The notes under the pieces: generated by a model
Database searches by the model: none
Seen by the model: the letters and a program-made list of their open reading frames with translations, nothing else
Told to the model about the DNA's origin: nothing
IMG/VR virus record: IMGVR_UViG_3300028654_000001
Coordinates: 310,001 to 374,000 of that record
Direction: 5' to 3' (one strand)
DNA: 64,000 bases
Program-made: the position numbers and the translations under genes
Shown here: piece after piece, positions 8,399-58,308 of the stretch
How the letters are laid out: each line of letters opens with the position of its first letter
How positions within the stretch are numbered: position 1 is the stretch's first letter

Positions 8399-8758
8399 AT
8401 GTCCAACGAAGATTGTCCGAACTGCACTGGCCACACCAAACTGAACTGCATCCAAGATCAATTTGGTTCCAAACTAGCAAAACTACTGCAAGATACCTTG
8501 AAAGAAGTTCAGGCCCAAGTCTCTGAGGACTCCCCAGAGGTCAACGGCCGCAAAGAAGCATTCCCTCTCGAGCTTGCTGATCATCTTCTATGGCTCGCCG
8601 CCTCAGTCTACGTTGGGGAGGGATCCCCGGGTTCAGAAGCCATCTACGAGCTGGCAAAGGCTCTTGAAGAGGTTGGATCTGAACCTGATGAGGACGAAGA
8701 TCCAACGGGAGTTGAACCCCCAGGGCCACACTTGGTGTCAGGACATGACGTTAACTAG
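8399..8758 (+). CDS. Hypothetical acidic protein with N-terminal CxxC
   Basis: 119-aa ORF with protein-like composition, preceded by the GGTGTA motif 10 nt upstream. Confidence 0.7.
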   Translation: MSNEDCPNCTGHTKLNCIQDQFGSKLAKLLQDTLKEVQAQVSEDSPEVNGRKEAFPLELADHLLWLAASVYVGEGSPGSEAIYELAKALEEVGSEPDEDEDPTGVEPPGPHLVSGHDVN

Positions 8759-42922: not shown

Positions 42923-43009
42923 TGTTATGCTCCAGTTTCAGTATCTTTATGGGCCTGAGCCCGTTGAACTACAAATTTGAAAAGGGAGGGGTCTTTTGCA
43001 CCCTTATGG

Positions 43010-44638: not shown

Positions 44639-44675
44639 CTGCTACGTAGAGGGCCTACAACAAGATTCACGAAAC

Positions 44676-44834
44676 CTATTCGCCTTCATCTTCATCCCAA
44701 GCAGTGGGTGGTGGACAGGGGATGGTATCCCTATCCATTCTGAAGTTTGGTACTAGAGGTGCACTCGGGATGATGGGATCCTTTAAGTCAGGTGCCCGTT
44801 CACCTGATCCCTCACTGGTAGCTATAGGGTTCAC
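44676..44834 (-). CDS. Small Pro-rich acidic protein (52 aa)
   Basis: Below ORF-track cutoff. GTG start 6 nt after the upstream stop; MNPIATSEGSGERAPDLKDPIIPSAPLVPNFRMDRDTIPCPPPTAWDEDEGE*. Confidence 0.5.
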   Translation of the reverse strand: MNPIATSEGSGERAPDLKDPIIPSAPLVPNFRMDRDTIPCPPPTAWDEDEGE

Positions 44835-44840
44835 ACCTAT

Positions 44841-45686
44841 TCAGATTCTCAAAAACACTTCTAACAGGTGAGATACTAGAATCTTAGTACCTACAGCGGG
44901 TGAGTGCACAAAGTCCCCCTCGAACTGCCACTCTGGAACACCACCAGAAATTGCATCCAAGTCATTCAAGAATGGAATGCAGTAAGAAAGATTGGGCCAT
45001 GCTCTTTCATTCTTTCTGGAAACCAAAATGGGAGTTGAGTCTCCAACAGGTGCCCCTATAAGAATTCCTCGTAGGTGCCCCAATCGATACAGGACTTCCC
45101 AAGATTCTATGGTTGGCCTACTCGTTTCTGCAATAACAAACCCATTGGTTCCAATGTCTAAGACCCTAACTTCAGGCAAAGGTGCCCCAATTGATGGAAT
45201 CCTCCCATCAATTAGATACTCCCTTATCCACTGCACCGCAGTCCCTATCCTCTCACCACGATCTATCTTCGATAGTGTATCAGGGAAGAACTTGTTGAAT
45301 GAGCGTATGAAGCCAGCAATTGTCGGGTCAAGGTGGGCCAACATGGAAGACCCCAACCTATGAACTAGATCAATCCCATACACGAGACCTAAGGTAGCCG
45401 GGTTGAGGGCTAAGTCCCGATTCAAGAATAGAGTGATGGCCAGGATGGTATCTGGCCCCCTTACTTCATGAGTAGTGAAGCTCAGCGGGAGTGGGGTTCC
45501 ACAAATCAAATCCTCGAAGAACTGGGTGAGCGCCCCTGGGGACCTTGGGTTGAAGTCCTCACCGTGGTGCTCATAAACCATTGGCCCAAGTTGAGATCTA
45601 CGCGCCCCCGTCTCAAAGCAAATGGTGTCGTCAACTAAAGCAGGTTGTCCAGGATCAACAGTGACCTGGAACTGAAGTTGTTCCAT
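44841..45686 (-). CDS. Hypothetical protein, possibly a degenerate DHH-like phosphoesterase fold
   Basis: 281 aa; VYEHHG and THEVRGPDTILAITL loosely recall DHH-superfamily motifs. GGTGTA motif 10 nt upstream. Confidence 0.5.
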   Translation of the reverse strand: MEQLQFQVTVDPGQPALVDDTICFETGARRSQLGPMVYEHHGEDFNPRSPGALTQFFEDLICGTPLPLSFTTHEVRGPDTILAITLFLNRDLALNPATLGLVYGIDLVHRLGSSMLAHLDPTIAGFIRSFNKFFPDTLSKIDRGERIGTAVQWIREYLIDGRIPSIGAPLPEVRVLDIGTNGFVIAETSRPTIESWEVLYRLGHLRGILIGAPVGDSTPILVSRKNERAWPNLSYCIPFLNDLDAISGGVPEWQFEGDFVHSPAVGTKILVSHLLEVFLRI

Positions 45687-45705
45687 CCTCGGTGACTACA
45701 CCGAG

Positions 45706-46500
45706 TTATGAGAAGTCGTAATTGTACTCTGAGGGGTTGCTCTTGGCTCCACAGGTACAAGCACCCTCGCACTTGCACTCAGTACCGCAGGTTCCATCAC
45801 AGGCCCCATCACAACCAGACTTCTGGACAGCTGCTCGAACGATGTCTCGAACATTAGAGATGGGTACCCCAGCAATGCGATCCGGAACTGGGATGTCCGC
45901 CACCTCACCAGAGCTATATCCTGAATAGATCTGCTCACTCGCAAACCGAGCTCCAAGTCCGTGACTTAAAAGAATGGTGATGACATTGCTGGCTTCCTTT
46001 GAGGTAAGATCTTTGATTGCATCCTGATCCACCGGCCACGAGAGCCCAGTATCATCCCATTGGACCTCCTCAGCTCGAGAAGCCATGCTCAGGATGAACT
46101 TGATCTGCTTATCTGAAGCTGGCGGCCCCTTTGAACCAGGTGCAGCATTACCACGCTGATCCCAGTATTCAGCCTTCTCCTCGTACAACTCCAGGTATTC
46201 TTCAATCTTGTCCTGTAAGGAGTTACGCCAGTTATTGGTTCTCTTTACAAGAAATGAACCTCCAACAAGTGGCTTGTCAATTTTAACTCCGAGGAATACG
46301 ACTCTAATAGAGTCATCCCCTGCTCCCGCTGAGTAACCACTCTTCATGATTGAAGTGTAGATTCGAATAACTACTGAAGGGCTCAATGACAAGTCATATA
46401 TAACCTGCCCTCGAAATGATCCCTCCTCAGGCCTCAATGCTCGGAAACCCCTTTTGAGGAAAGTTTCCATCTCCTTCAGAGTTACTTCAACGTAAGCCAT
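45706..46500 (-). CDS. Hypothetical protein with ASDKQ...EAS..I helical motif and Cys-rich tail
   Basis: 264 aa; PASDKQIKFI...LTSKEASNVITILL (DUF3072-like) and C-terminal CDGACDGTCGTECKCEGACTCG. Confidence 0.65.
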   Translation of the reverse strand: MAYVEVTLKEMETFLKRGFRALRPEEGSFRGQVIYDLSLSPSVVIRIYTSIMKSGYSAGAGDDSIRVVFLGVKIDKPLVGGSFLVKRTNNWRNSLQDKIEEYLELYEEKAEYWDQRGNAAPGSKGPPASDKQIKFILSMASRAEEVQWDDTGLSWPVDQDAIKDLTSKEASNVITILLSHGLGARFASEQIYSGYSSGEVADIPVPDRIAGVPISNVRDIVRAAVQKSGCDGACDGTCGTECKCEGACTCGAKSNPSEYNYDFS

Positions 46501-46501
46501 C

Positions 46502-49500
46502 TCAAAGCTCCTCAGAGTAAATGGAGTCTACTGGATCAGCAGAGGATTCCTTAGCCACCTCTTGCGGCTCAACACCTGGTTTGGATACGTTCTCACCAGG
46601 TGCCAGACCTGCATCAAAAACAAAGGGGCTCATCCCTTTCGGACAGGTAATCTCAAGATTGACTGCTGCTCGAGTCAAGGCCACATAGGCTAGGTTGCGT
46701 TCAGCCTTCATCCGAGACGCTTCCTGAACTGGATCCGGAGGTGGATCATCGGGCTTAGGTTTTCTCTCCATTGGAAAGAGCCCTTTGGGCATGACCACTG
46801 CCACATTCTGCCACTGAGCCCCCTTTACCGAATTATGTACGATTGCCCCACCACTCACGTAATACTCGTGAGGTAGTACCCGAAGACTGAACACCTCTCC
46901 GTGATAGGGCTCTCTTTCAACCTGAAGAACACTCCAGCAAGGTTTGGTCCAAGCCTTCTTAGTCCCAACACCTGTAACGAACTCCGATGATACCACCGGA
47001 AGTTCCATGTAACCACTCAAGAGGTTACATGCTCTAATCAAGAATGCAACACTATAATTGTTCTTCTTCTCTGGACCAAGACCCCTAACATAGAGTGGGT
47101 ACTTGATATCAAGACCATACTCTCTGAGCAAGTTCAAAGCCCTTGGAGCAACGTAGGATTTGGTGCTCTCATGTATAGCATGAAGCTGACCCGAAGAAAG
47201 AATTCGTCCATTTCCTTTTGTATCCTGGTAGGCTTCGAAGGTCACCCCTGGGATCCCATAAATGCCTTGGATAAGGCATTCCATCTTCATGGCTTCCGCC
47301 TTTGTAGAAAACACACCTAAAATCCAACCTGCATCAGCTTTCTCTGTACCTAAACGACCACCAACCCCACCAGCCTTATAGGGGCGTGTAGCAGAAACAC
47401 AGTGTCCAACTCTCCACCAATCCCCACGACGCATTAGATACACAACGTATTTATTCATGAAGCTGTTCGATAGCTTCACCAACAAACGATGATTAGGGGT
47501 TACTCTTGTCGTACTACTATCAGTCACAACCTTGATAAGATCCCCACTATAAGGACGACTACCCCTAACAAAAGCATAACCTTCATGGTGGGTAGTTGTC
47601 TTACTCCTCGGCCCTCGTTTACCCGAACGACCCCAAAAAAGTTGGTTACACCCCTTCATATATGAAGCTAAGCGATGCTTAGACTGGTTTAACTCCCCTA
47701 TCGGAACCCAGCCATCGGTGGTTAGAATCAACTCATCAGGGGGTGAGCAATGAACCGTAGAGAGCGTGATAGCCGGAGGCTTTTCCTTCCTTAGTCCTGG
47801 AGGTAACTCCTGTTGCTTCTTCTCCCACTTGGCAGGATCTACTCTAAGGGTAGCCGCGAGCTTCGAGTACCTAGCCAGCTTTTTGATGTAGCCATGGGCT
47901 AAGGCTGGATCAGTTGCTTCTTTCTGGTCGTTCTCATTGGGATGAGCCAATGAGAACAGGAACTGGACAGCCCCAAGCCCCTTACCTTGATTAGACTTCT
48001 CTTTAACCTTAAGAAGCCCCTCCTCGCCTAACTCATTATGGACGTCAGTTTCCTTGTCATCCTCATCTTCTACGTCCTGTTCATCATCGGAATAGATAGC
48101 GGCATCCTCAGAGATTTGCTCTCGCAAAGTTGCGGTTGCAAAGGATTCTGTTCTGGTTGCGGAATCCCAACTCTTGACCGTTGAGCTGGTATTATCCAAG
48201 ATGTAATTGAGGAGCTCCTCCGTCGTGTGGTTACCCTCAATGTACTCCTGAAGGTCTCTGATACCAGGAGCTATCCCACGTAGGGCATCTGCTAGGTCAT
48301 CAACTATACGACCATAGGCATATTCTGCAGTACTTATACTCTTCCCCTTACGTACCATAGAATCTACGATGGCTGCCCTATAGGGCATCTTAAGACGGTC
48401 AGCCAATACTCGTACATAACGAGAGTCCAGCAAGATGTCAGGTCTGACATTCCTCACGTCTACCCTCTGCTTGCGAGCTACCTCATCAAGGGCTTCGTCT
48501 ACTGCTTTCTCTAGGTCACTGTGACTTAGGCGCACCCCACGATCAGGCTTGGTAAGAATAGAGATGAGAGAGTCCCTCATCTTCTCATAGTCATTCCCGG
48601 TTGCTAGATCAATGTACCCAAGTACCGCTTTGGATTCGGGTGCCTCAAGAAAACCCCTTCCACCTCTACGAATGTAGGGGATCTCATTGATGATGCAAGC
48701 TGTTTCGAAGTCGTTGAGTTCAGCATTAGTCCTAGCTAATACTGCGAAGTCCTCTGTAGCAGCTCCCTCGTCGATATCCTTTCGGTACCGCCCAATGGTG
48801 TCAATAGCAGCTTCAACATTGGAATCCGGAACATTCACTTGAATAGAAGCTTGGCCCGGACTCTTTCTCGGATCAGACTTAGAAGCTATCACCGTTCCGT
48901 CACTGTCACGCTCGATGAGTCTGTTGGCAGCTTCCACAATCTCAGGTTGGCACCGGTAGTTGGTTCGAATGGTGCGAAGAGTCCAACCCTCATCTAAGTT
49001 CTGGAATAGCTCTGGTTTGGCCCCACGGAACTGGTAGATTGCCTGTTTCTCATCACCAACCATCCAAATTGACTTGTCCTTGGAGTCTTGTGGAATATGC
49101 TCAGAGAGCATACCAAAGATCTGGTGCTGAACCGTATTGAGGTCTTGAGCTTCATCCACGAGGATATGATCGAACATACCCTGCATGACTTCCTTAGCCT
49201 TCGGATCACGTCTCAAGATGTCCCTCAGGATCTTGAGCATGTCATCCATATCCCCTAGGCGCTCCTTGCCCCTACGGTTCTTCGACATGAAACTCTCGTA
49301 CGGCTTGGATGGGTTACACGGGGGAAGCCAACCAGGGATATCCCCCTTAAGCCCTAAGTACATCTCGTACCAGATCACAGCCTGAGCTTCAGCTTGTGAG
49401 TTGACGGATGCCTTAGCCTGCTCGAGAGTCACATCATTCCCACGCCAAGCGTTGAGGAGTAACCCTGCCTTCTTTGCCTGAGGTGGATTCTCTACCCACT

Positions 49501-50914
49501 TCCTGGGGTACCCGTAGCGAGATACCAAAGCATCTGGACCACACTCCATCCACATATTTCGGATGGTTAATGAAAGGCTAGAAGGGTTGATGGTTTTCTG
49601 CTTACCCCAAGGAGGGGCTACTAATCTCGGAGGAGTAAGCATCGCTTTCTCCTCTGGGGTCCCAAACCCAGGCTTCCCAGTAGTACCGATTAGGTTCTTG
49701 AACAAGGCGTGCATAGTCCCAACCTGCACCCCAGTGGTACCAACCACACCACTGAGCTTGCCCTTGATCTTGTCCTCCAACTCAACTGCTGCCTTTTTGT
49801 TGAAAGAACAAGCCATGATTCGAGCAGGGTTGACCCTTCCGTCCTTCACTAGATACTCGATACGAGATACCAGGGTCGTCGACTTCCCACTACCGGCGCC
49901 AGCCGCTACTCGAACCCTTCCACCGGTGAGAGCTGCTGCCCTCTGCTCATCATCCAGATGCTGCAATGGTACTGGTATGTTTTGGAGAATATTTGGGTCA
50001 CTGATGGCAGCCACTGCAACCGCAGTGGCAATACCAACAACCTCGGACTGCTTTGGAGGCTCATCAGGTTTTTGATTAATATCAAGAGATTTCTTGGCCG
50101 CAGCGGTAGCATTTACCTGAACAGTAGCCAACATTGCCGATCGGGAGTCTTGGGTGATCTGAGTCTCTTGTGCTCCAACCGCAGCCGATTCCTTGATACT
50201 CGTAGTTGTGAGAGCTATGGAGTCTTGGATCTCATTAGAAGCACTGTCCACCGGCTCTGGAGCAAACTGACCTGACCCTGCCTGCTTAGCCGCATCATCA
50301 ATCCAGTCCCTCATCCGAATGTTCAACATCGGAATTGCAGCAAATATGTCGAGAGCCTTGTCTGCATCGTCCAACATGGAGGCGGCAATGGATTGCTTGA
50401 CCTGTCGAACGTACTTGGGGTTCTCCAAGATCCCCTTCACAGTTGCAGTACCCCCTCGAGTAAGGAGGGTCCTGAACTGCAAGGCCCTTCGAGCGGCTCC
50501 CGCTGGGTTGAAGGCTTTCAGGTTCAGAGCTCTCCGAAGCATTGCCTTCTGTGATGGTTTTTCTAAGTGACTCTCGAGGAAGTCCCCGTAAGCATCAAGT
50601 TGGGTATCCGCCATCCGAAGGATGTGAAGACCCTTCTTGATGAGAGCATCTTCGGTATTATCAACCCCAGAGGTCTCTTCTGCGTACCTCTCGTACGTAT
50701 CCAGAGCCAACAGGAAGATGATGTACTCGGCGACCTGAAACTCACCAACGGGCTCATCTTCACCATCAGCAGGCGGCGCAGCAGCTCTCACCGTTGAGGC
50801 TATCGGAACCAACAGAGGGTTATTCCGAGCCCTAGCAAACAAGTTGGCTTGGGCTGGGCTCTCATCAATAGTCTGGGTCATCAGATTCTCCGGATCTACG
50901 TAGATGGCTTTCAA
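46502..50914 (-). CDS. uvrD: UvrD/PcrA/Rep SF1 helicase with ~310-aa N-terminal extension and an intein
   Basis: Motifs VAAGAGSGKST, SFNKKAA, GTMHA, ILVDEAQD, VGDEKQAIYQFRGA, TNYRC, AVLARTN, STVH|SVKGAQW and ERNLAYVALTRA. Confidence 0.95.
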   Translation of the reverse strand: MKAIYVDPENLMTQTIDESPAQANLFARARNNPLLVPIASTVRAAAPPADGEDEPVGEFQVAEYIIFLLALDTYERYAEETSGVDNTEDALIKKGLHILRMADTQLDAYGDFLESHLEKPSQKAMLRRALNLKAFNPAGAARRALQFRTLLTRGGTATVKGILENPKYVRQVKQSIAASMLDDADKALDIFAAIPMLNIRMRDWIDDAAKQAGSGQFAPEPVDSASNEIQDSIALTTTSIKESAAVGAQETQITQDSRSAMLATVQVNATAAAKKSLDINQKPDEPPKQSEVVGIATAVAVAAISDPNILQNIPVPLQHLDDEQRAAALTGGRVRVAAGAGSGKSTTLVSRIEYLVKDGRVNPARIMACSFNKKAAVELEDKIKGKLSGVVGTTGVQVGTMHALFKNLIGTTGKPGFGTPEEKAMLTPPRLVAPPWGKQKTINPSSLSLTIRNMWMECGPDALVSRYGYPRKWVENPPQAKKAGLLLNAWRGNDVTLEQAKASVNSQAEAQAVIWYEMYLGLKGDIPGWLPPCNPSKPYESFMSKNRRGKERLGDMDDMLKILRDILRRDPKAKEVMQGMFDHILVDEAQDLNTVQHQIFGMLSEHIPQDSKDKSIWMVGDEKQAIYQFRGAKPELFQNLDEGWTLRTIRTNYRCQPEIVEAANRLIERDSDGTVIASKSDPRKSPGQASIQVNVPDSNVEAAIDTIGRYRKDIDEGAATEDFAVLARTNAELNDFETACIINEIPYIRRGGRGFLEAPESKAVLGYIDLATGNDYEKMRDSLISILTKPDRGVRLSHSDLEKAVDEALDEVARKQRVDVRNVRPDILLDSRYVRVLADRLKMPYRAAIVDSMVRKGKSISTAEYAYGRIVDDLADALRGIAPGIRDLQEYIEGNHTTEELLNYILDNTSSTVKSWDSATRTESFATATLREQISEDAAIYSDDEQDVEDEDDKETDVHNELGEEGLLKVKEKSNQGKGLGAVQFLFSLAHPNENDQKEATDPALAHGYIKKLARYSKLAATLRVDPAKWEKKQQELPPGLRKEKPPAITLSTVHCSPPDELILTTDGWVPIGELNQSKHRLASYMKGCNQLFWGRSGKRGPRSKTTTHHEGYAFVRGSRPYSGDLIKVVTDSSTTRVTPNHRLLVKLSNSFMNKYVVYLMRRGDWWRVGHCVSATRPYKAGGVGGRLGTEKADAGWILGVFSTKAEAMKMECLIQGIYGIPGVTFEAYQDTKGNGRILSSGQLHAIHESTKSYVAPRALNLLREYGLDIKYPLYVRGLGPEKKNNYSVAFLIRACNLLSGYMELPVVSSEFVTGVGTKKAWTKPCWSVLQVEREPYHGEVFSLRVLPHEYYVSGGAIVHNSVKGAQWQNVAVVMPKGLFPMERKPKPDDPPPDPVQEASRMKAERNLAYVALTRAAVNLEITCPKGMSPFVFDAGLAPGENVSKPGVEPQEVAKESSADPVDSIYSEEL
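46832..47749 (-). mobile_element. Intein (306 aa) in helicase motif V
   Basis: Begins CSPPDELILTTDGWVPIGEL, has block B TRVTPNHRLLV, ends VFSLRVLPHEYYVSGGAIVHN followed by Ser. Removal restores LSTVHSVKGAQW. Confidence 0.93.
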
Positions 50915-50931
50915 TAGAAAGGCAAACGGTT

Positions 50932-52842
50932 TTACTTACCGGGCTCCAAAAACCCCTCGTCAATCAACCTTCCTCGAATATATTCGGGGTCTGCATAGGG
51001 TTCGTCCTCCCGAACCAAGAAGTACCTGAGCACTGGGTCGGATTGAATCAGGTTCTCCTTGATCCTATCGCGCTCTTGGAGTGCGAAGAAGAGCTCCTCT
51101 CGTTTGATATACACCGATGGGAATACCCAATGTTGCCACCCATGAAATTCCACTATCAAGTTATGAGATGGGAAGTAACCGTCAAAACGAAAACGATGAC
51201 CTGATGGTGGGTTTACGAATCTCCAAGACTTCCACTCTTGTTCGAATGGTACGCCACCTAAAGCTTTTGACACCGCATCAAGACAGATAGTTTGACGAAT
51301 ACTATGACTAAATGTCTCCAAACCATGTCGTGTGCACTCGCGCTTTACAACCTTGTAGTCCTTCTTGAGTCCAACCATAGCGGAGGCTACAACTACTTTC
51401 CCATTCTTCAACCTAAAAGGTATTAAGTCTTCTTTTTCCAACCTAATGATCTGCCGCTCCACTCTAGCGTCTACATACTTAGTAGAGCTACGAAGTCCAA
51501 TAACATCCATGTATTTTCTCAAAGTTGGGTCACAAATATCGAGATCTTCTGCCATGGTCTTAAGATCCACAGCACCAACTTCATCAAGATACGGAGTAAA
51601 GTCAATCAAGGCTAGGTCCAACCTTGTTGCATCATTCGGAACCCCAGTTTTGATAAGTGAGAGCTTATTTGAGGTGCTTTGGAGACTAGGGTGATCCTCT
51701 TTAGTGAGACCCTTGCTCCATGAAGCCCGACCCTTCATGGCTTCTGCTGCATTAGCCACACGTACATCAGTCTCTTTGGTCAAACCACGATTCCATCCGG
51801 CACTAGCAGACATCTTAGCCTTCACCTCATCGGATAGTTTTCGCCCTCTAAGAGCTGAAGGACCGTGAACTTTAGAACTTAGAGCTATGAGTTTGAAGTT
51901 TGGGTGAATAGCCTCATACCGCCCGACTAGCTCTCGATGCTCACTGTTAACGTGAGAGGTTAGGTTCTCTGCTTGGTAACCGCAGACTTGACAAGTCACA
52001 TAATCTTCCGGTTCTGACTTACCATCCCATTTGGATAAGTCTGCTGCTTCAAGATCAGCTTGTTTACATTCTGGGCATCGAGAATCATGAGTAGAGTAGG
52101 CAAAAAATGCTGAAACTTCAATCTCTTGGTCACAACCTGAACATAATATGGTTTTCGTCTTCCCTTTTGTAGGGAATTTTTCATGAGATTCTCTCGCTGA
52201 CACCCCACGGAGTACTGTCAAAGCTTCAGAACGAATAAGGGCCTCTGGGAACTGCATCCTGTATTGACCAGCATTAATCTTATGTGCTGCCAACAAGTGG
52301 CGAGCTAGGGTTACTGACTTGTGTCCGCAAAGAAGGCAGGTCACGTAATCCTTACTTTCAATCTTCCCCTCCCAAGTCAGGTCCTCTTGAACTTGTAGGT
52401 ACTCCTGGTGATTCACATCAGCAACTTGAGCTAGATGCATTGAAAGTCCTTTTGAACCAGAACACCCAAGACCACACACCGGGCACTGACGGTCAACCCC
52501 TCGTTCTCTATCGGAACAGGTAGGGCAAGTAACTCTGCTTAGTCTAGACCTTGAAAGTATGGTTACTGAAGTAGGGGTACCACATTCCGCACAAGGTTCC
52601 ACTACCTCTTTCATCTTATGGGTTGACCCAGCCCTACTACGCCCACAAGCGACTGCTGCTGCTGATTGTAACTTATTCCCACGAGAATCAAAAGCTTCCT
52701 GCCCAAACTTTTCAACCCACCACTTTCGTAGAGTGTTGGGAGAGACCTCGAGACGTTTTGCTATTGCCTTGAAACCCTCAGTAGACTCAAACAGTGAGTA
52801 GGTATCTAAGGGGGTGGTAGAAGAGTGTTTACCAACGGGCAT
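50932..52842 (-). CDS. Free-standing homing endonuclease-like protein: HTH, multiple zinc fingers, NUMOD3-like repeats, C-terminal PD-(D/E)XK/Vsr-like nuclease
   Basis: Two DYVTC..CG.....L..H Ros/MucR-like fingers, WNRGLTKETD / WSKGLTKED repeats, and RFRFDGYFPSHNLIVEFHGWQHW...RDRIKE nuclease motif. Confidence 0.8.
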   Translation of the reverse strand: MPVGKHSSTTPLDTYSLFESTEGFKAIAKRLEVSPNTLRKWWVEKFGQEAFDSRGNKLQSAAAVACGRSRAGSTHKMKEVVEPCAECGTPTSVTILSRSRLSRVTCPTCSDRERGVDRQCPVCGLGCSGSKGLSMHLAQVADVNHQEYLQVQEDLTWEGKIESKDYVTCLLCGHKSVTLARHLLAAHKINAGQYRMQFPEALIRSEALTVLRGVSARESHEKFPTKGKTKTILCSGCDQEIEVSAFFAYSTHDSRCPECKQADLEAADLSKWDGKSEPEDYVTCQVCGYQAENLTSHVNSEHRELVGRYEAIHPNFKLIALSSKVHGPSALRGRKLSDEVKAKMSASAGWNRGLTKETDVRVANAAEAMKGRASWSKGLTKEDHPSLQSTSNKLSLIKTGVPNDATRLDLALIDFTPYLDEVGAVDLKTMAEDLDICDPTLRKYMDVIGLRSSTKYVDARVERQIIRLEKEDLIPFRLKNGKVVVASAMVGLKKDYKVVKRECTRHGLETFSHSIRQTICLDAVSKALGGVPFEQEWKSWRFVNPPSGHRFRFDGYFPSHNLIVEFHGWQHWVFPSVYIKREELFFALQERDRIKENLIQSDPVLRYFLVREDEPYADPEYIRGRLIDEGFLEPGK

Positions 52843-52846
52843 GACT

Positions 52847-52890
52847 AAACCTCACTTCGGTATGGATACCACCAAAGTGAGGTCTGTCAA
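52847..52890 (-). promoter_or_regulatory. TTGACA promoter plus RBS-sequestering hairpin upstream of the endonuclease gene
   Basis: Minus strand reads TTGACAgacctcactttggtggTATCCATaccgaagtGAGGtttagtcATG. acctcactttggt pairs with accgaagtgaggt (13 bp, one G-U) and covers the GAGG RBS. Confidence 0.65.
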
Positions 52891-52945
52891 TATTATGTCT
52901 TGAACTACCTTGTAAGTGCTTGAATCAATAAAGGTTTCTTGGGAC

Positions 52946-55900
52946 CTAGATCCTAGCTCTAAGGTTGAATGTTAAGACGATATAGAGCAAGGGAAAAATT
53001 GGAGCATAATATGCTACAGCATTCAATATCGTTGGATCATTAGGATCTACCGTAGCGGCGATACCGGTGAAGGCCGAGACGATCTCCTGCTGGATCAACT
53101 GCTTGAAGAGGGAGGTCATCGAGACCTCGACTTCATTGGTTCGACTCGACAGGAACTTGGTACCTACGTACGCGTCAAGGACTGACCTGGAACTGATCGA
53201 GACGTAGTCAGCGATCTGGGTTACCGTGGGCAACCGGGTCAGGATGTTCGTCATGTTGGTCGTGAGACCCTGACGGATCCGGATGATCGGCTGCAGATCT
53301 TCCAGGATTGTGATACCAGCCGTGGCCGTTTGATTGGCTTCGACCGGATCCATGATCCTGGGAATCTGGGTGAACCCTTGGAGCTGACGCCTCGTGTACG
53401 GGGTAGCAACATCCACAGCCGGGGAGCACACAGCACCGGCGACGGCCGCCGCGAAGAAGGTCCCATCCACCAGAGACTGGTAGGTGTTCCCGAGCTCGTC
53501 GGTGAAGGTGACTACTACCGAATCCGGGTAGAGAGCCACGATTCTCGAACTGAACAAGGACTTCGCAATGGTCTGAGCCACGGTGGGGGTTGTTCCACTG
53601 GCAAATCCGATCATACCCATCCGCTCACTCTGGTTGCGAATGTTTGACATGACTTCACAGTGCTGAGTCAGGTACGAGTACACTGCTGTATCCGTGCTGA
53701 GGGGCACAATGACGTCAGGCTTGACGTTACCGGGAAGAGGAGCAGCCAACCCTTGAATAGCCGTTATGAAGGACTGTGCAGAGGCCTGGTTCGTATTTGG
53801 AACCTTGAGAACCTGCTTGATCCCGACAAGAACAGCACCATTGAGGATGGCCAAGTAGGCACCCAGAGTAACCCTGTTCTCAGCATTGAGTGGGCCGTAA
53901 ACACCCTCAATAGTCTTGAACTGAGAGTACAGCTTCGTCGAGAAGTCCTGCTTCATGTAGTAGTAACTAATGAAGTAGAAATCCCCGTTGGCGGGCTCAA
54001 CCCCAGAAGGATTGAACGTCTCGATGTTAGCTGTGTCATTCACTCCAATCCCAACCGTATTGGCCACGATGGTCTCGAGGCCCGGAATTGAATAGAATGG
54101 CGCTCCTGGATTCACAGAGAATGTCTGTGAAGCAATCAGGGTGAAGTGGCCTGCACTGTCGTAGTGCCCAGTGGTAGACGGTAGAATCGTGAACCTAAGG
54201 CCTGTACGAGCATCCGTATAGGTCTGACCTGGGTACCCTATACCAGATGATCCATTGACCGTATCCGAAGAGGTAACCGCAAATTTGTCGGTGGCATCCT
54301 CACCATCGTCCCCAGAGATCCCAGGAACAATTCCAGTCCCAGTGAGGGTATTGAAGGCCGTAGAGGCTACGAACCCAATGCTGCTGGTGATGCCCGTCGT
54401 CAGGGACTCAATGGTGACATAAGTCTGGCCATTGAGGGTTGACGGATAGGCAACTGCACCAGTATCGAACCCAGATGTGCCCATGAGGGAGTCAACTACC
54501 TCTTGAGCCGATACCAAAGTCTGGCTCGCGAAAGATCCTTGGCTGAACCCAAGGAGGGTATTCGCTGTACCATCACCAATCAGAACTGCAGACTGAGTCT
54601 GATTGGTGTTACTTGTGATCCGGATCTTACCAGCATTTGCTAGAGTACCGTCAGTAGCCGAACCTTGTGAGGTTACTACGGCATTGATCTGTTTAGCAAT
54701 TACACTCGCTGACATTGACTCGATGTCAATCGAAATCGTACCATCGAAGGTAGCTGTTGGGATAATGCTCAACGAACCAGTGCTGGTAGCTGTAACCGAA
54801 ATCACAGTTGTGTCCGCTACCCCTGCAGTTGTGACACCACCAAAGACTACGTCAACTGTACCAGCTGTTGACGTGATGGTAATGGTAATGGTGTAGACTG
54901 CACTAATTATAGCAGCTAGTGGGTTAACCAAAGCTGCTACATTACCAACACCAGCCGTATGGGTGAAGGTATTGTAGGTTGTCGTCCAATTAGTCCCAGT
55001 GTACCCCGTGGTTGGTGTAATCCCATTAGAGAGGGTTGTTGTGAAGTCAACCCCATTGAGCCTCACCTGGAAGGTGTCATTCACACCGGCAACAACTGTA
55101 AAGGGTTCTGCAACTGCTCCCAAGATGGTTGCAGGCTTGTTGACGGATCCTGTAGTTCCAAGAGCCTGTTCAAAGGTCTTGAACCCAAGTAGGGTCTCTG
55201 CCGTGCCTTGAGCAACATAAACTGAGCTGACAGAATCAAACCCACCGGGAAGTGCCCCAGGGGTCGTGTTGCTCTTGATCAGGAAGAAGGTTGAGGTTCC
55301 GCCGAATGCCGGTATAGCTGTTGCAGTGGCGGGAGTGATAACACCACTAATAGCCGATGCAACTGTTGATGGGGTTCCTGATGTCAGGGTTACTGTATGA
55401 GCAACCCCATCAATCACTAGGTTCAGGACATCATCTACCCCAGTGGTGAATACAACATCACCGCCGGTGAGGACAACTGCCTGACTAACCAGAGTAGCAG
55501 GTCTTGTTGTAAGTAGATTGGTGCTTACCGGAGTACTATTGACATTGGTGATCCAAGTCGCTGAAGCTGAGTAGAACGAGTAAGGCTGGGCCCCTTCGTT
55601 CGTGTAGACAGCATTGCGTGCCGGAGCCTGACCAAAGGTCACTGTAACGGTCTCTGAAACTGGTGCCCCAGCTCCCGTGTAGAGTGCATCCGGGATATAT
55701 TCAACACCACGGGGCCACTGCACGATCTCTGAGAGTCCACCCTTGGTTCCGAATCGAACCTGGTATAGGTTCGTATTCAAGAGTGAGGAGAACACGGTGT
55801 ACTGCCCAACCCCTACCGGGCCGGCAACCGTATTGGTCAGGATATAGGTATCATCTTCGATTCGGTTGTAATAGAACGTCGCGTAGACATTCCAATCAGC

Positions 55901-57463
55901 CGGAATAGAATCCCTCAGAGTGATCTTTCGGTTTGAACCGTCAACTGCAACTACGGTAGCTGCTGGATGACCTAAGGCATCCGAGAGGGTTCGACCTACT
56001 CGAGCAATGACCAAGTCGGGACGGTTCGTGACCACATCTTGTCGGCTATTGGTAACTGACGAGAAGAGGGCAGAGCCCAAAGTCGTGTCTCTACCGTTAC
56101 CTGTGGTGGGGATCTCAGGCAATAGAAACACTGTGTTACTGATCACAGCTGGGATGACCGAAGTATCTGCAAACCTAGTGCAAGGTGCCAGATACATCTT
56201 GTTATCAACAAGAGTCGGAATGATCTGAGTGTTGTCGAAAGGGGTTGCACCAGGAGTCTGCAACGTAGAGGATACCGAATAACTGGTACCCCAGTGGACA
56301 ATCGAGACATCCGGAGTCGGGTTCTTAATGACGAAGTCCGCACCCTGAATGTAGTCGGAACGTCCAGGACTGATGCCTGCCCTGATGACACTAGTCACCA
56401 ACGGGTTTGGCAAATAGTCGAAAGTATCCTGCCAGGTATTCGCCCAATAGTTGATCGTAACAACGGCTCCTGGAGGAGGCGCGAGAGTCAAAGTTACAAT
56501 ACCGTTGGTACCATCCACAGCTGAGGGGATTACCTGGACGTTGTTCACCTTTACGACAACCTTTGAGGTGTCAGTTGTGGTGATACCACCAGAGGTTCCG
56601 TCGACGATCGGGCGTTGGAACACCCTGAACTGAGTGTTACCACTCACAAGCTGATTACTCGAGAGACCAAGAATGCCATTTGCATTTCCTGAACCGATCT
56701 GAATCGAGGAGACCGCTGTGAGCTGTAGGTGAGTTGCATTTTGATTGTCAGTGAATACTGATGCAACTCCAACACCCAAGGCTGCTGTGATCTGAGTCAC
56801 TAAGCTTGCAGTAGAAGCAGTGGGAGAAGCCTGGAATACAACTGTCCGTAGGGATCCACCATTGAGGGCTACCTGAAGGGTGTCATTCACACCAGTGATA
56901 ATGTTGAACGGTCCAAAACCAGGGGTGATGATCGTCTGAGGGGCCTCACTAACCTGATAGGACACATTATCCGTAAAGGCCGTGTCAGAACGGTGGAAGA
57001 AGTATGTTACCCGAACGGTGTCCGATGGCTGAGGTGGTACTTGAAGGGTTAGGATACCAGCAGAGCCATTGACGGACCCCACCGCGACAGGAGAGCCATT
57101 GACGGTAACGGTCACATTTCGAACATCGTTTGTGACTCGACCGAAGCCCTCACCATCAACTATCGGAGTGTTCCGAACTCTGAACTGAGTTCGGGTACCA
57201 TCCTGAGCACCCAAAATCGGGTTACTTGGATTTGTAGTGTCCACAATCCATTCAGCGGAAACGTCTTCATTGACGATCTGCTCGTCAAGAGTAGAGGAAG
57301 ATCCTCTAACCATCTCGAGGTCGCTTACCTGGAGTTGTTCTTGACCTACACCGATTATGAAGGGAATACGAATGCCAGCTACGAGGGCTGCAACGTTTGC
57401 ATCGGTTAGTGTGCGGGAGTAAACACCTGGTTGAACATATGTCGAAAATGGTCCCAAACTCAT
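52946..57463 (-). CDS. Tail sheath protein with multiple inserted domains
   Basis: N-terminal YVQPGVYSRT; C-terminal sheath core (HCEVMSNIRNQSERMG, AAAVAG, GITILE...IRIRQGLTT, YYAPIFPLLYIVLTFNL). Confidence 0.93.
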   Translation of the reverse strand: MSLGPFSTYVQPGVYSRTLTDANVAALVAGIRIPFIIGVGQEQLQVSDLEMVRGSSSTLDEQIVNEDVSAEWIVDTTNPSNPILGAQDGTRTQFRVRNTPIVDGEGFGRVTNDVRNVTVTVNGSPVAVGSVNGSAGILTLQVPPQPSDTVRVTYFFHRSDTAFTDNVSYQVSEAPQTIITPGFGPFNIITGVNDTLQVALNGGSLRTVVFQASPTASTASLVTQITAALGVGVASVFTDNQNATHLQLTAVSSIQIGSGNANGILGLSSNQLVSGNTQFRVFQRPIVDGTSGGITTTDTSKVVVKVNNVQVIPSAVDGTNGIVTLTLAPPPGAVVTINYWANTWQDTFDYLPNPLVTSVIRAGISPGRSDYIQGADFVIKNPTPDVSIVHWGTSYSVSSTLQTPGATPFDNTQIIPTLVDNKMYLAPCTRFADTSVIPAVISNTVFLLPEIPTTGNGRDTTLGSALFSSVTNSRQDVVTNRPDLVIARVGRTLSDALGHPAATVVAVDGSNRKITLRDSIPADWNVYATFYYNRIEDDTYILTNTVAGPVGVGQYTVFSSLLNTNLYQVRFGTKGGLSEIVQWPRGVEYIPDALYTGAGAPVSETVTVTFGQAPARNAVYTNEGAQPYSFYSASATWITNVNSTPVSTNLLTTRPATLVSQAVVLTGGDVVFTTGVDDVLNLVIDGVAHTVTLTSGTPSTVASAISGVITPATATAIPAFGGTSTFFLIKSNTTPGALPGGFDSVSSVYVAQGTAETLLGFKTFEQALGTTGSVNKPATILGAVAEPFTVVAGVNDTFQVRLNGVDFTTTLSNGITPTTGYTGTNWTTTYNTFTHTAGVGNVAALVNPLAAIISAVYTITITITSTAGTVDVVFGGVTTAGVADTTVISVTATSTGSLSIIPTATFDGTISIDIESMSASVIAKQINAVVTSQGSATDGTLANAGKIRITSNTNQTQSAVLIGDGTANTLLGFSQGSFASQTLVSAQEVVDSLMGTSGFDTGAVAYPSTLNGQTYVTIESLTTGITSSIGFVASTAFNTLTGTGIVPGISGDDGEDATDKFAVTSSDTVNGSSGIGYPGQTYTDARTGLRFTILPSTTGHYDSAGHFTLIASQTFSVNPGAPFYSIPGLETIVANTVGIGVNDTANIETFNPSGVEPANGDFYFISYYYMKQDFSTKLYSQFKTIEGVYGPLNAENRVTLGAYLAILNGAVLVGIKQVLKVPNTNQASAQSFITAIQGLAAPLPGNVKPDVIVPLSTDTAVYSYLTQHCEVMSNIRNQSERMGMIGFASGTTPTVAQTIAKSLFSSRIVALYPDSVVVTFTDELGNTYQSLVDGTFFAAAVAGAVCSPAVDVATPYTRRQLQGFTQIPRIMDPVEANQTATAGITILEDLQPIIRIRQGLTTNMTNILTRLPTVTQIADYVSISSRSVLDAYVGTKFLSSRTNEVEVSMTSLFKQLIQQEIVSAFTGIAATVDPNDPTILNAVAYYAPIFPLLYIVLTFNLRARI

Positions 57464-57561: not shown

Positions 57562-58308
57562 CTAGTCTGGGACTACACTAACACTACAGGGAGATAAGTG
57601 ATTTAGGTGGTACCACTTCTTAGAATTCACTCTAGCCTTCTGGCGTGACTCTTCCAAGTGTTCAGAACTCCATAACCAACGAGTTATCGTTTGACGTGGG
57701 ATTCCAAACTTCCTCTCAGCAGCATGAAAACCAATGATTTTAGCCTCTGAAGTAACAGTAGCTACTATACTATCTGTATACTTGCGCTTAGATTCACTAA
57801 GTTTTGCTCTAGACTCAGCAGACAATGTGCGATGAGTGCTGGCCAAGGAGATCTTGGTTCTGGTTTCATCAGACATAGCCATGCTCTTTCTTACAGAACT
57901 GACTTTAGCCCTGAGCCGAGCAGCAGAGGGATCATCCGATTGGTGCCAAGACTTGAGCTTATCGGATATCTTCTTTTTAGCAATATCAGAAGGGGTTAGG
58001 CCCCATGAACCCTCTCCACCAGAAGTCAGGTTATACCCAACTTCTCTATCTGTGGTGTCAAAAAACTGAATCAGGAACTTCTCAATCTCACAAGCTTTCT
58101 CCCAAGTTGAAACTGAGGTGATCTCGTGCCAAGTAAAACTCCCCGGGCCATACTTGCGGATAGCTCTATGAAGTCTGCAGTTAGAGGCACCTCGACTGGC
58201 ACTACTGATATGTCGACTCACCCGGCGTTTAAGATAATTTGAGGTGATCCCGAAGTAAAACTTCGCACTGGGATTGCACACTGCTATGTAGACCAAGATC
58301 TCAGGCAT
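57562..58308 (-). CDS. GIY-YIG homing endonuclease with NUMOD3 repeats and HTH
   Basis: LVYIAVCNPSAKFYFGIT...RRVSRH, LHRAIRKYG, EKFLI, GYNLTSGGEG; MSDETRTKIS / LSAESRAKLS; C-terminal AERKFGIPRQTITRW. Confidence 0.92.
   Translation of the reverse strand: MPEILVYIAVCNPSAKFYFGITSNYLKRRVSRHISSASRGASNCRLHRAIRKYGPGSFTWHEITSVSTWEKACEIEKFLIQFFDTTDREVGYNLTSGGEGSWGLTPSDIAKKKISDKLKSWHQSDDPSAARLRAKVSSVRKSMAMSDETRTKISLASTHRTLSAESRAKLSESKRKYTDSIVATVTSEAKIIGFHAAERKFGIPRQTITRWLWSSEHLEESRQKARVNSKKWYHLNHLSPCSVSVVPD

What the first reader, a model, noticed from the sequence alone, without database searches (positions are those of the whole stretch)
52843..52890. Homing endonuclease silenced on the sheath transcript by an RBS hairpin, with its own promoter inside the hairpin
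Seen: a 13-bp stem buries the GAGG RBS. A perfect TTGACA and a TGn-TATCCAT -10-like element are placed so that a transcript from this promoter would lack the 5' arm. Established: T4 I-TevI and related endonuclease genes use RBS-occluding hairpins bypassed by an internal promoter. Inference: the logic seems inverted here, with a host-type promoter permitting expression while the abundant late sheath read-through mRNA is translationally blocked.
Basis: partly seen in the sequence, partly recalled or inferred. Interest (0 to 1): 0.62.

Follow-up and report, generated by a model that had tools for sequence, protein, structure and literature searches.

The report
Promoter-in-hairpin switch on a phage nuclease gene
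Just after the tail-sheath gene of a 513-kb phage, a mobile nuclease gene begins inside a strong RNA hairpin that hides its ribosome site, and a host-type promoter is built into that hairpin; dozens of related phages keep this layout, a known phage T4 trick in a new lineage.

Summary
On the minus strand, 52842-52889 folds into a 20-bp stem with one bulge (-27.9 kcal/mol, z -7). It buries GAGG and the A of the AUG of a 636-aa gene lying 103 nt after the tail-sheath gene. TTGACA, a 16-nt spacer and TGG-TATCCA sit so that the spacer is the 5' arm, the -10-like hexamer is the loop, and the predicted start falls in the 3' arm.

Comparative data support the layout.
- In 63 of 63 related contigs the homologue directly follows the sheath gene.
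- Of 52 non-redundant spacers, 38 carry TTGAC (shuffles 5.3) and 27 carry TTGACN-N16-18-TAnnnT (shuffles 0.2).
- The stems fall into at least 15 unrelated sequence types.
- In the window's subclade every stem substitution keeps pairing.

The gene product has a Ros-type zinc finger, further DNA-binding-like motifs and a Vsr-like nuclease domain. It is sporadically present, swapped as a cassette, and decaying or deleted in some relatives, as homing endonuclease genes are.

Weak points:
- The window's own -10 lacks T at -7 and drifts among close relatives.
- Sites that lost the gene keep a hairpin, so the stem probably also serves the sheath mRNA.
- No RNA data were available, so timing is untested.

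Verdict: a new variant of the T4 I-TevI/segB/mobE arrangement.

The parts
52946..57463 (-). Tail-sheath gene (1505 aa), the upstream gene whose transcripts would run into the hairpin.
   Evidence: tblastn to annotated tail sheaths (Tunturi_5, phage G, Myrna-like phages) and 81% coverage of LR745208. It lies directly upstream of the homologue in 63 of 63 loci.
52890..52945 (-). Spacer between the sheath stop codon and the hairpin. It is poorly conserved and has no strong structure.
   Evidence: the alignment is variable up to the TTGACA, where conservation starts abruptly.
52885..52890 (-). TTGACA, a -35-like hexamer. Its last five bases are the foot of the 5' arm.
   Evidence: Invariant in the 5 subclade sequences. 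TTGAC is present in 38 of 52 non-redundant homologous spacers, against 5.3 in shuffles and 3 on the antisense strand.
52863..52871 (-). TG + G + TATCCA, an extended -10-like element. The hexamer at 52863-52868 lies in the hairpin loop.
   Evidence: The spacer is 16 nt. The last hexamer base is A, not T. Close relatives have TATCCC (L086) and TACCCC (L004), and L005 loses the TG. In 27 of 52 relatives the same position reads TAnnnT.
52842..52889 (-). RNA hairpin: 5' arm 52870-52889, loop 52863-52869, 3' arm 52842-52862, bulged A at 52846.
   Evidence: -27.9 kcal/mol, z -7.05; 20 pairs, 100% of cells paired in 5 sequences, 3 pairs with changes on both sides and 3 with wobble-compatible single changes.
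52854..52858 (-). Predicted transcription start (about 7 nt after the -10-like hexamer), inside the 3' arm. It would give a leader of about 14 nt with a free GAGG.
   Evidence: Inference from promoter geometry. No RNA data were available.
52850..52853 (-). GAGG Shine-Dalgarno sequence, 7 nt before the ATG and fully paired in the long leader.
   Evidence: It is not conserved as sequence in L005 (GGGC there), although the pairing is kept.
50932..52842 (-). 636-aa gene (P0001), a free-standing homing-endonuclease-like protein. It has an N-terminal HTH-like region, zinc ribbons, a Ros/MucR-type zinc finger, NUMOD3-like repeats and a C-terminal nuclease domain.
   Evidence: Pfam ROS_MUCR 2.2e-9. 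Ros 2jsp 1.7e-8. NUMOD3 0.002, below the family cut-off. Family alignment. 86 homologues on contigs of up to 484 kb.
50935..51309 (-). Vsr-like PD-(D/E)xK nuclease domain (residues about 512-636). E536, D554, H571, D592 and K595 are invariant.
   Evidence: AlphaFold model with pLDDT 93.5. VIA-align: Vsr 1cw0 Z 9.1, I-Bth0305I catalytic domain 3r3p Z 8.7, DUF559-like 3hrl Z 7.5. Invariant columns.
51185..52949 (-). Variable cassette relative to the close relative L012: spacer, promoter, hairpin and the first ~553 codons (the DNA-binding part).
   Evidence: blastn finds 88% identity up to 52950 and 82% from 51184 onward, with no nucleotide match between. Protein identity is 45% here, against 86% and 92% in the flanking genes.
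46502..50914 (-). UvrD/PcrA-like helicase gene (1470 aa), the downstream neighbour. In relatives that lack the nuclease gene it follows the sheath gene directly.
   Evidence: Pfam and NCBIfam. Empty sites.

Best explanation
This is a nested promoter-and-hairpin switch at the 5' end of a free-standing, homing-endonuclease-like gene parked just after the tail-sheath gene.

How it would work:
- RNA that arrives from the sheath gene contains both arms of a 20-bp stem. That stem locks up the Shine-Dalgarno sequence and the first base of the AUG, so the nuclease is not translated from the sheath message.
- A sigma-70-type promoter is laid over the same DNA. TTGACA is the foot of the 5' arm, the spacer is the 5' arm, the -10 hexamer is the loop, and transcription starts in the 3' arm.
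- Only RNA made from this promoter lacks the 5' arm and has an open ribosome site. In about a third of relatives such RNA begins at or within 0-6 nt of the AUG, so it would be leaderless or nearly so.
- The stem probably also serves as the 3' stem-loop of the sheath mRNA.

Shown here: the structure, its conservation with covariation, the family-wide promoter motif and its geometry, the nuclease fold, and the mobile-element behaviour of the gene.

Inferred: promoter activity, read-through, the translational effect, and which polymerase or time of infection uses the promoter.
For: Structure:
- The start region ranks 2nd of 739 in the genome.
- In 5 subclade sequences all 20 pairs stay paired, with 3 double compensatory and 3 wobble changes. 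Sliding the partner columns drops pairing to 34-45%.
- Sense-strand folds are more stable than antisense folds in 28 loci against 9 (Wilcoxon p = 6e-4), which points to RNA rather than a DNA palindrome.

Promoter:
- TTGAC occurs in 38 of 52 spacers (shuffle mean 5.3, maximum 12).
- The full pattern TTGACN-N16-18-TAnnnT occurs in 27 of 52 (shuffles 0.2, maximum 2; antisense 0; 255 sheath-coding windows 0).
- Some relatives have near-consensus sites: L037 and L054 TATAAT, L050 TATAGT, L063 TATGAT.

Geometry:
- In 33 loci, 8-29 pairs span the predicted start.
- Typical energies are -16 to -37 kcal/mol for long leaders and 0 to -9 for short ones.
- In most loci the unpaired probability of the start region is several-fold higher in the short leader.
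- The stems fall into at least 15 unrelated sequence clusters.
- The stem's 3' end sits at a median of +1 nt from the start codon.

Co-inheritance: the cassette swapped between close relatives carries its own promoter and hairpin together with the DNA-binding part of the gene.

Loss of the gene:
- L095, L100 and L103 lost the gene and keep the stem, but TTGACA has become ATGACT or ATGATT.
- L016 has both a nonsense codon in the gene and a 15-nt spacer.

Precedent: T4 I-TevI, I-TevII, I-TevIII, segB and Aeh1 mobE (PMC2988022).
Against: - There is no transcript or translation evidence; no RNA run was listed.
- In the window itself the -10 is TATCCA, with A at -7. The five subclade copies vary at two of its six positions (the third and the last; TATCCA, TATCCC, TACCCC), and L005 loses the TG. 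All of this is as expected for an unconstrained loop.
- The consensus scan does not call the site.
- 14 of 52 spacers have no TTGAC.
- A hairpin follows the sheath gene even where the nuclease gene is absent, so the stem could exist for the sheath mRNA alone.
- L090 uses a separate terminator plus a promoter instead.
- The short leader still has a weak fold touching GAGG (-5.7 kcal/mol).
- The phage carries its own sigma-family ORFs, so 'host-type, early' is unproven.
Confidence: 0.6

Rival explanations
1. The hairpin is mainly the 3' stem-loop of the sheath mRNA, acting as a terminator or a shield against 3' exonucleases. On this view the occlusion of the next gene's ribosome site is a side effect of tight packing.
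For: - Relatives that lack the nuclease gene still have a strong hairpin right after the sheath gene. L095, L100 and L103 keep a homologous stem, and L103 has improved pairing.
- L109 and L114 have a classical stem plus U-run.
- Some gene-bearing loci have U-rich tails: L021, L026 and L034 have at least 5 T in the 8 nt after the stem, and L008, L037 and L044 have 4.
- L090 has a separate 23-bp terminator.
Against: - Only 3 of 52 stems are followed by at least 5 T in 8 nt.
- The window's tail is UUUAGUC, and the terminator scan does not call it.
- The stem's 3' end coincides with the start codon (median +1), and its 5' foot coincides with TTGAC. A pure sheath 3' element needs neither.
- Each swapped cassette brings its own stem.
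- This role is compatible with the main explanation rather than exclusive of it.
Confidence: 0.2
2. The inverted repeat is a DNA operator. The HTH and zinc-finger protein would bind its own promoter and repress it, as I-TevI does at its late promoter.
For: - The repeat spans the region from the -35 to about +15.
- The protein has several DNA-binding modules.
- The DNA-binding part of the gene and the repeat are inherited together as one cassette.
- I-TevI autorepression is the precedent (PMC2988022).
Against: - G-U pairs are tolerated, and they become G-C or A-U rather than being avoided.
- Sense folds beat antisense folds in 28 loci against 9.
- Stems of 10-29 bp without a spacer between the half-sites are unlike typical dimer operators.
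- It could act in addition to the RNA role.
Confidence: 0.08
3. The long perfect stem is an RNase III-type processing site. Cleavage there would separate the sheath mRNA from the downstream mRNA.
For: A continuous helix of about 20 bp lies between two genes. Phage intergenic RNase III sites are well known; this is general knowledge and was not tested here.
Against: - No evidence for cleavage exists, and the host is unknown.
- It does not explain the invariant TTGAC or the TAnnnT in the loop.
Confidence: 0.07
4. The stem and the promoter-like words are a chance coincidence in one sequence.
For: The -10-like hexamer in the window is poor, and the consensus scan does not list the site.
Against: - 0 of 200 shuffles fold as well.
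- The enrichment and geometry hold family-wide.
- Covariation supports the stem.
Confidence: 0.02

Closest known systems
Translational control of T4-type homing endonuclease genes (I-TevI, I-TevII, I-TevIII, segB; mobE of phage Aeh1): an RBS-sequestering hairpin with a promoter placed inside it (PMC2988022)
   Same: - A stable stem hides the Shine-Dalgarno sequence on transcripts coming from the upstream gene.
- A promoter immediately upstream of the endonuclease ORF is placed so that its own transcript lacks the inhibitory arm.
- The gene is a selfish nuclease gene sitting between, or inside, conserved phage genes.
   Different: - The embedded promoter has the TTGACA-N16-18-TAnnnT (sigma-70) form, not the T4 late TATAAATA form.
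- The silent long transcript would be that of a structural (sheath) gene rather than an early or middle gene, so the temporal logic may be reversed.
- The whole promoter is superimposed on the stem (spacer = 5' arm, -10 = loop).
- About a third of relatives would make leaderless or near-leaderless mRNA.
- The phages are 0.2-0.5-Mb phages unrelated to T4.
- Nothing has been tested experimentally.
EDxHD / Vsr-like homing endonucleases (prototype I-Bth0305I, PDB 3r3p; PMC3239194)
   Same: - A C-terminal Vsr-like nuclease fold (Z 8.7 to 3r3p and 9.1 to Vsr 1cw0).
- Invariant E, D, H and D residues in the same order as the composite motif.
- An N-terminal modular DNA-binding region.
- Found in phages.
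   Different: - No sequence-level match to Pfam, NCBIfam or PDB for the nuclease domain.
- Free-standing rather than encoded in an intron or intein.
- Much larger (636 aa), with Ros/MucR-type zinc fingers and zinc ribbons.
- Cleavage activity and target are unknown.
Intrinsic terminator or 3' stabilising stem-loop after a highly expressed phage structural gene
   Same: A strong stem directly after the sheath gene, present whether or not the nuclease gene is there.
   Different: The window has no U-run, and only 3 of 52 relatives do. The stem ends at the next start codon and starts at a -35 hexamer.
T4 late genes soc, e, 49, 25, 26, which have RBS hairpins bypassed by internal late promoters (PMC2988022)
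   Same: The start site chosen decides whether the ribosome site is open.
   Different: Those are ordinary phage genes driven by late promoters. Here the gene is a mobile nuclease gene with a sigma-70-like promoter.

Membership tests
T4-type RBS-sequestering hairpin with internal promoter | A stable RNA stem pairs the Shine-Dalgarno sequence and/or start codon of the endonuclease gene. | tested here: met
   The 20-bp stem covers GAGG and the A of the AUG, at -27.9 kcal/mol and z -7. It is conserved with compensatory changes.
T4-type RBS-sequestering hairpin with internal promoter | A promoter is placed so that its transcript lacks the 5' arm. | tested here: inconclusive
   At sequence level the geometry is met in 33 loci, and the motif is enriched about 100-fold over shuffles. 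The window's own -10 lacks T at -7. No start-site data exist.
T4-type RBS-sequestering hairpin with internal promoter | The internal promoter is a T4 late promoter (TATAAATA). | tested here: not met
   The element is TTGACA-16-TATCCA, and relatives have TTGACN-N16-18-TAnnnT.
T4-type RBS-sequestering hairpin with internal promoter | Long transcripts are translationally silent and short ones are translated. | not testable with these tools
   Only folding predictions are available: the unpaired probability of the start region is 0.10 in the long leader and 0.36 in the short one.
EDxHD / Vsr-like homing endonucleases | Vsr-like PD-(D/E)xK catalytic fold. | tested here: met
   Model pLDDT 93.5. 1cw0 Z 9.1 with 110 residues aligned; 3r3p Z 8.7 with 96 of 98; 3hrl Z 7.5. 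Foldseek alone was weak, with E 0.03-0.13.
EDxHD / Vsr-like homing endonucleases | Composite catalytic motif E...D...x...H...D. | tested here: inconclusive
   E536, D554, H571 and D592 are invariant in 27 sequences, and H567 is in the 'x' position. Order and spacing resemble Vsr E25/D51/H64/H69/D97. Residue-by-residue superposition was not checked.
EDxHD / Vsr-like homing endonucleases | Sequence similarity to family members. | tested here: not met
   The nuclease domain has no Pfam, NCBIfam or PDB sequence hit. There is only a weak PHROG 'HNH endonuclease' hit at 3.7e-6.
Homing endonuclease genes in general | Sporadic presence or absence at one site between conserved genes, with degenerate and deleted copies. 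| tested here: met
   Of 42 newly fetched sheath-selected loci, 24 have the gene, 9 have the helicase directly after the sheath, and 7 have another insert. A deletion remnant is seen in L095. W472-to-stop occurs in L016/L098. An allele at 45% identity sits between flanks at 86% and 92%.
Homing endonuclease genes in general | Site-specific cleavage of the gene-less allele, followed by gene conversion. | not testable with these tools
   This needs purified protein and an empty-site substrate.
Sigma-70-type promoter | -35 TTGACA, 16-18 nt spacer, -10 TAnnnT. | tested here: inconclusive
   The window has a perfect -35, a 16-nt spacer and TG at -15/-14, but the -10 is TATCCA, with A at -7. 27 of 52 relatives meet the full pattern.
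Intrinsic terminator | A G+C-rich stem followed by a U-run. | tested here: not met
   The tail is UUUAGUC and the scan does not list it. 3 of 52 relatives have at least 5 T in 8 nt.
Known RNA families (Rfam 15) | Match to a curated covariance model. | tested here: not met
   No match with E up to 1 in 52500-53200.

The most novel reading that the evidence does not exclude
A clade of 0.2-0.5-Mb phages carries, always directly after the tail-sheath gene, a previously undescribed lineage of free-standing Vsr-like homing endonucleases. Their expression would be gated purely by where the mRNA starts. The sigma-70-type promoter is written into the two arms and loop of an RNA stem. Abundant sheath transcripts therefore carry a silent copy, and only promoter-derived RNAs are translated; in some members these would be leaderless, starting at the AUG. 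The regulatory stem and the DNA-binding half of the protein would be exchanged between phages as one cassette. A similar 'promoter motif in a hairpin loop' design may also apply to the phage's own GGTGTA sites.
Probability: 0.4. Interest if true: 0.7.

Novelty: new variant of a known kind. Interest (0 to 1): 0.55.

Why it matters
- **Convergent control.** It would show that hiding a selfish nuclease's ribosome site on the host gene's transcript, and freeing it from an internal promoter, arose or spread far outside T4-like phages. It would also show the trick working with a different promoter class and probably the opposite temporal logic.
- **A natural test set.** There are 33 loci in at least 15 unrelated stem-sequence types, with and without a leader, plus decayed copies and empty sites. 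That set could be used to study how start-site choice controls translation.
- **An annotation aid.** The layout helps mark promoters and mobile nuclease genes in uncultured huge phages.
- **A candidate enzyme family.** It defines a new free-standing Vsr-like endonuclease family whose DNA-binding modules are swapped between phages.

Tried and rejected
- Megablast of 50800-53400 against the phage collection found no match.
- tblastn of the 636-aa protein against phages found only a 106-residue hit to Alicyclobacillus phage KKP_3916.
- A search for RNA sequencing runs listed none, so read laying was not used and no start-site evidence could be obtained.
- Rfam gave no match.
- The hairpin sequence occurs once in the window.
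- The sigma-70/terminator consensus scan calls neither the promoter nor a terminator here.
- Sequence searches of the C-terminal domain against Pfam, NCBIfam and PDB gave nothing useful. Foldseek was only weak. VIA-align was needed to see the Vsr-like fold.
- Genome-wide, TTGACN-N16-18-TAnnnT is not enriched when coding DNA is included (27 and 32 sites against 18-32 in shuffles). It is enriched about 5-fold in upstream intergenic DNA (9 sites against 1.7 expected). This promoter type is therefore a minority in the phage.
- The GIY-YIG endonuclease gene upstream of the sheath gene was checked for the same design and lacks it.
- 'Gene always present, hence not mobile' was considered. It was rejected once sheath-selected loci showed empty sites.
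- 'Classical terminator' was considered and rejected for the window.
- The large representative-protein search, the metagenome scan and the complex prediction were not used, because the question did not need them.

Full report
**Context**

The window is bases 310001-374000 of a 512,571-bp viral genome with direct terminal repeats, rated complete. Nearly all large ORFs here are on the minus strand.

- ORF 52946-57463(-) (1505 aa) is a giant tail sheath. tblastn matches annotated sheaths of Tunturiibacter phage Tunturi_5, Bacillus phage G and Myrna-like mycobacteriophages. It covers 81% of an uncultured 485-kb phage, LR745208.
- The next ORF downstream, 50932-52842(-) (636 aa, P0001), starts 103 nt after the sheath stop codon.
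- It is followed by a UvrD/PcrA-like helicase of 1470 aa.

**Observation**

The stem is longer than reported. It has 20 pairs with one bulge, spans 52889-52842, and includes the A of the AUG.

| RNA | Energy (kcal/mol) | z against shuffles |
|---|---|---|
| Hairpin alone | -27.9 | -7.05 (0 of 200 as stable) |
| Leader from the -35 to +20 | -31.0 | -6.4 |
| Leader from the predicted start (about 52856) | -5.7 | -0.5 |

Among 739 ORF starts in the genome, this start region is the second most structured. The consensus sigma-70 scan does not list the site, because the second hexamer ends in A rather than T. It lists no terminator here either. Rfam has no match.

**Comparative evidence for the stem**

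Three viral contigs carry homologues at 75-93% identity, and an NCBI contig carries one at 98%. Over the 20 pairs in these 5 sequences:

- Every cell is a standard pair.
- L005 has three pairs changed on both sides (A-U to G-C, C-G to G-C, U-A to C-G).
- Three single changes are wobble-compatible (G-U to G-C, U-A to U-G, G-U to A-U).
- Sliding the partner columns reduces pairing to 34-45%.

In L005 the GAGG becomes GGGC while the pairing is kept. What is conserved is therefore the occlusion, not the Shine-Dalgarno word.

**Comparative evidence for the promoter**

A profile search of viral contigs gave 63 loci with full-length relatives. In all 63 the homologue lies directly after the sheath gene, with a typical spacer of 50-110 nt, although sheath identity ranges from 37 to 87%. 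Nearly all have a strong stem abutting the start codon, with unrelated stem sequences.

| Test set | TTGAC | TTGACN-N16-18-TAnnnT |
|---|---|---|
| 52 non-redundant spacers | 38 | 27 |
| Dinucleotide shuffles of the spacers | mean 5.3, max 12 | mean 0.2, max 2 |
| Antisense strand of the spacers | 3 | 0 |
| 255 sheath-coding windows | 30 | 0 |

Several sites are near-consensus: L037 and L054 have TATAAT, L050 has TATAGT, and L063 has TATGAT.

The geometry is constant:

- TTGAC is at the 5' foot of the stem, with the first paired base 0-7 nt from the start of the hexamer.
- The spacer is the 5' arm, the -10 hexamer sits at the loop, and the predicted start is in the 3' arm.
- In 33 loci, 8-29 pairs span the predicted start.
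- Typical energies are -16 to -37 kcal/mol for long leaders and 0 to -9 for short ones.

These 33 loci fall into at least 15 clusters of unrelated stem sequence. Sense-strand folds are more stable than antisense folds in 28 loci against 9 (p = 6e-4), as expected for selection on the RNA.

Two classes emerge. In one, the predicted start lies 11-24 nt before the start codon, with the Shine-Dalgarno sequence in the 3' arm; the window belongs here, at 14 nt. In the other, 12 of the 33 loci, the distance is 0-6 nt, so the RNA would be leaderless or nearly so. For L087 and L088 the database gene calls agree with these start codons.

**Weak point in the window itself**

In its own subclade the -10-like hexamer reads TATCCA (window, L005, L006), TATCCC (L086) or TACCCC (L004). 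None has T at -7, and L005 loses the TG. These changes look like free drift in a loop. The promoter may be weak or decaying in this subclade, even though the perfect -35 is invariant.

**What the gene is**

- P0001 has an HTH-like N-terminus, zinc ribbons and a Ros/MucR-type zinc finger (Pfam 2.2e-9; Ros structure 2jsp 1.7e-8). It also has NUMOD3-like repeats (0.002, below the family cut-off).
- The C-terminal about 125 residues match no sequence family.
- They fold confidently (pLDDT 93.5) into a PD-(D/E)xK domain. The closest structures are Vsr endonuclease (Z 9.1), the catalytic domain of the homing endonuclease I-Bth0305I (Z 8.7) and a DUF559-like protein (Z 7.5).
- E536, D554, H571, D592 and K595 are invariant in 27 diverse homologues. 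Their order matches the composite EDxHD motif described for I-Bth0305I and Vsr (PMC3239194).

**Mobile-element behaviour**

- Selecting loci by the sheath C-terminus instead of by the nuclease gene gave 42 newly fetched loci. Of these, 24 have the gene, 9 have the helicase directly after the sheath, and 7 have another insert.
- The window and L012 share 88% nucleotide identity up to the sheath stop codon (52950), and 82% from 51184 onward (from the FDGYF catalytic motif). Nothing alignable lies between. The spacer, promoter, stem and first ~553 codons are therefore exchanged as one cassette, with 45% protein identity against 86% and 92% in the flanking genes.
- L016/L098 carries W472-to-stop just before the nuclease domain, together with a 15-nt promoter spacer. 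Its near-twin L015/L099 is intact.
- The empty sites L095, L100 and L103 align with a gene-bearing relative up to the sheath end and again from just after the gene's stop codon. L095 and L100 retain a 9-nt remnant of the gene's 3' end. All three keep a homologous stem in which TTGACA has become ATGACT or ATGATT.

This is the invasion, decay and loss pattern expected of a homing endonuclease gene. Cleavage itself is untested.

**Mechanism**

The most economical reading is the one known from T4 I-TevI, I-TevII, I-TevIII, segB and Aeh1 mobE (PMC2988022). Transcripts entering from upstream form the stem and are not translated. Transcripts from the embedded promoter lack the 5' arm and are translated.

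There are two differences. The promoter has the sigma-70 form rather than the T4 late form, and the silent transcript would be that of a structural gene.

Whether the promoter is used by host polymerase early in infection cannot be decided here.

- The phage encodes at least three sigma-70-family ORFs.
- Its most enriched upstream motif is GGTGTA, not TTGACA.
- Sigma-70-like sites are a minority and cluster elsewhere in the genome.

**Second role of the stem**

Empty sites keep a hairpin, and in L109 and L114 it is a classical terminator. L090 uses a separate terminator followed by a promoter. The stem therefore probably also ends or protects the sheath mRNA.

Termination is unlikely to be its main role in most genomes. 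Only 3 of 52 stems are followed by a U-run, and the 3' end of the stem coincides with the start codon (median +1). An operator role for the inverted repeat and an RNase III site cannot be excluded, but neither explains the invariant TTGAC or the strand asymmetry.

**Verdict**

It is a new variant of a known regulatory design, attached to what appears to be a new free-standing Vsr-like endonuclease lineage in huge phages.

Noticed in passing
whole genome G000; in the window e.g. upstream of 8399..8758 (+): The most enriched 6-mer in upstream intergenic DNA is GGTGTA (5.4-fold, 57 copies), usually as (C/T)GGTGTA. Its first G lies 15-19 nt before the start codon of about 26 genes. It may be a phage-specific promoter giving very short leaders, or an unusual ribosome signal. 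Some copies sit in hairpin loops as divergent pairs, for example at genome 222.68-222.71 kb.
   Followed up: partly
window 46847..47746 (-), inside the helicase gene 46502..50914: The UvrD-like helicase has a 300-residue insertion (residues 1057-1356). It begins with Cys and ends ...VHN followed by Ser. It is absent from L004, L012 and L015 and appears to be present in L005. Intein models match weakly (intein_Nterm 9e-4, Intein_splicing 0.008). It is probably an intein with presence/absence polymorphism.
   Followed up: partly
window 57562..58308 (-): A 248-aa GIY-YIG homing endonuclease gene (PHROG 314, 6e-29) lies between the 145-aa zinc-ribbon gene and the sheath gene. The close relatives L005 and L006 have only about 260-270 nt there, and LR745208 has an unrelated 119-aa ORF. 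It has no RBS-occluding hairpin.
   Followed up: partly
L016/L098 (IMGVR_UViG_3300037067_001369) against L015/L099: One natural copy of the nuclease gene has TGG-to-TAG at codon 472, just before the nuclease domain, and a 15-nt promoter spacer. Its near-identical twin is intact. This looks like a decaying copy.
   Followed up: yes
window 42923..52945 against L003 (LR745208): About 10 kb lies between the sheath gene and the conserved 241-aa gene: the nuclease gene, the helicase, and ORFs of 264, 281 and 542 aa. In the distant relative LR745208 a single 190-aa ORF takes its place.
   Followed up: partly
G000 255.6-256.1 kb, 77.3-77.8 kb, 485.2-485.4 kb, 423.8-424.2 kb (outside the window): The phage encodes at least three ORFs with sigma-70 region 2 and/or region 4 domains above the Pfam cut-offs. 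Promoter classes other than the host type are therefore expected.
   Followed up: no
L090 (logan SRR26268931_31750) 1347..1500: In this relative the sheath gene is followed by a perfect 23-bp stem with a U-run, and only then by TTGACA and the start codon. Insulation is achieved by a separate terminator instead of the nested design.
   Followed up: partly
window 52946..57463 (-): The sheath protein is about 1500 aa, roughly three to four times the length of the region that aligns to Myrna-type sheaths. Only its last ~340-420 residues align to the Myrna-like, Gordonia, Rhodococcus and phage G sheaths, so most of the protein is lineage-specific.
   Followed up: no
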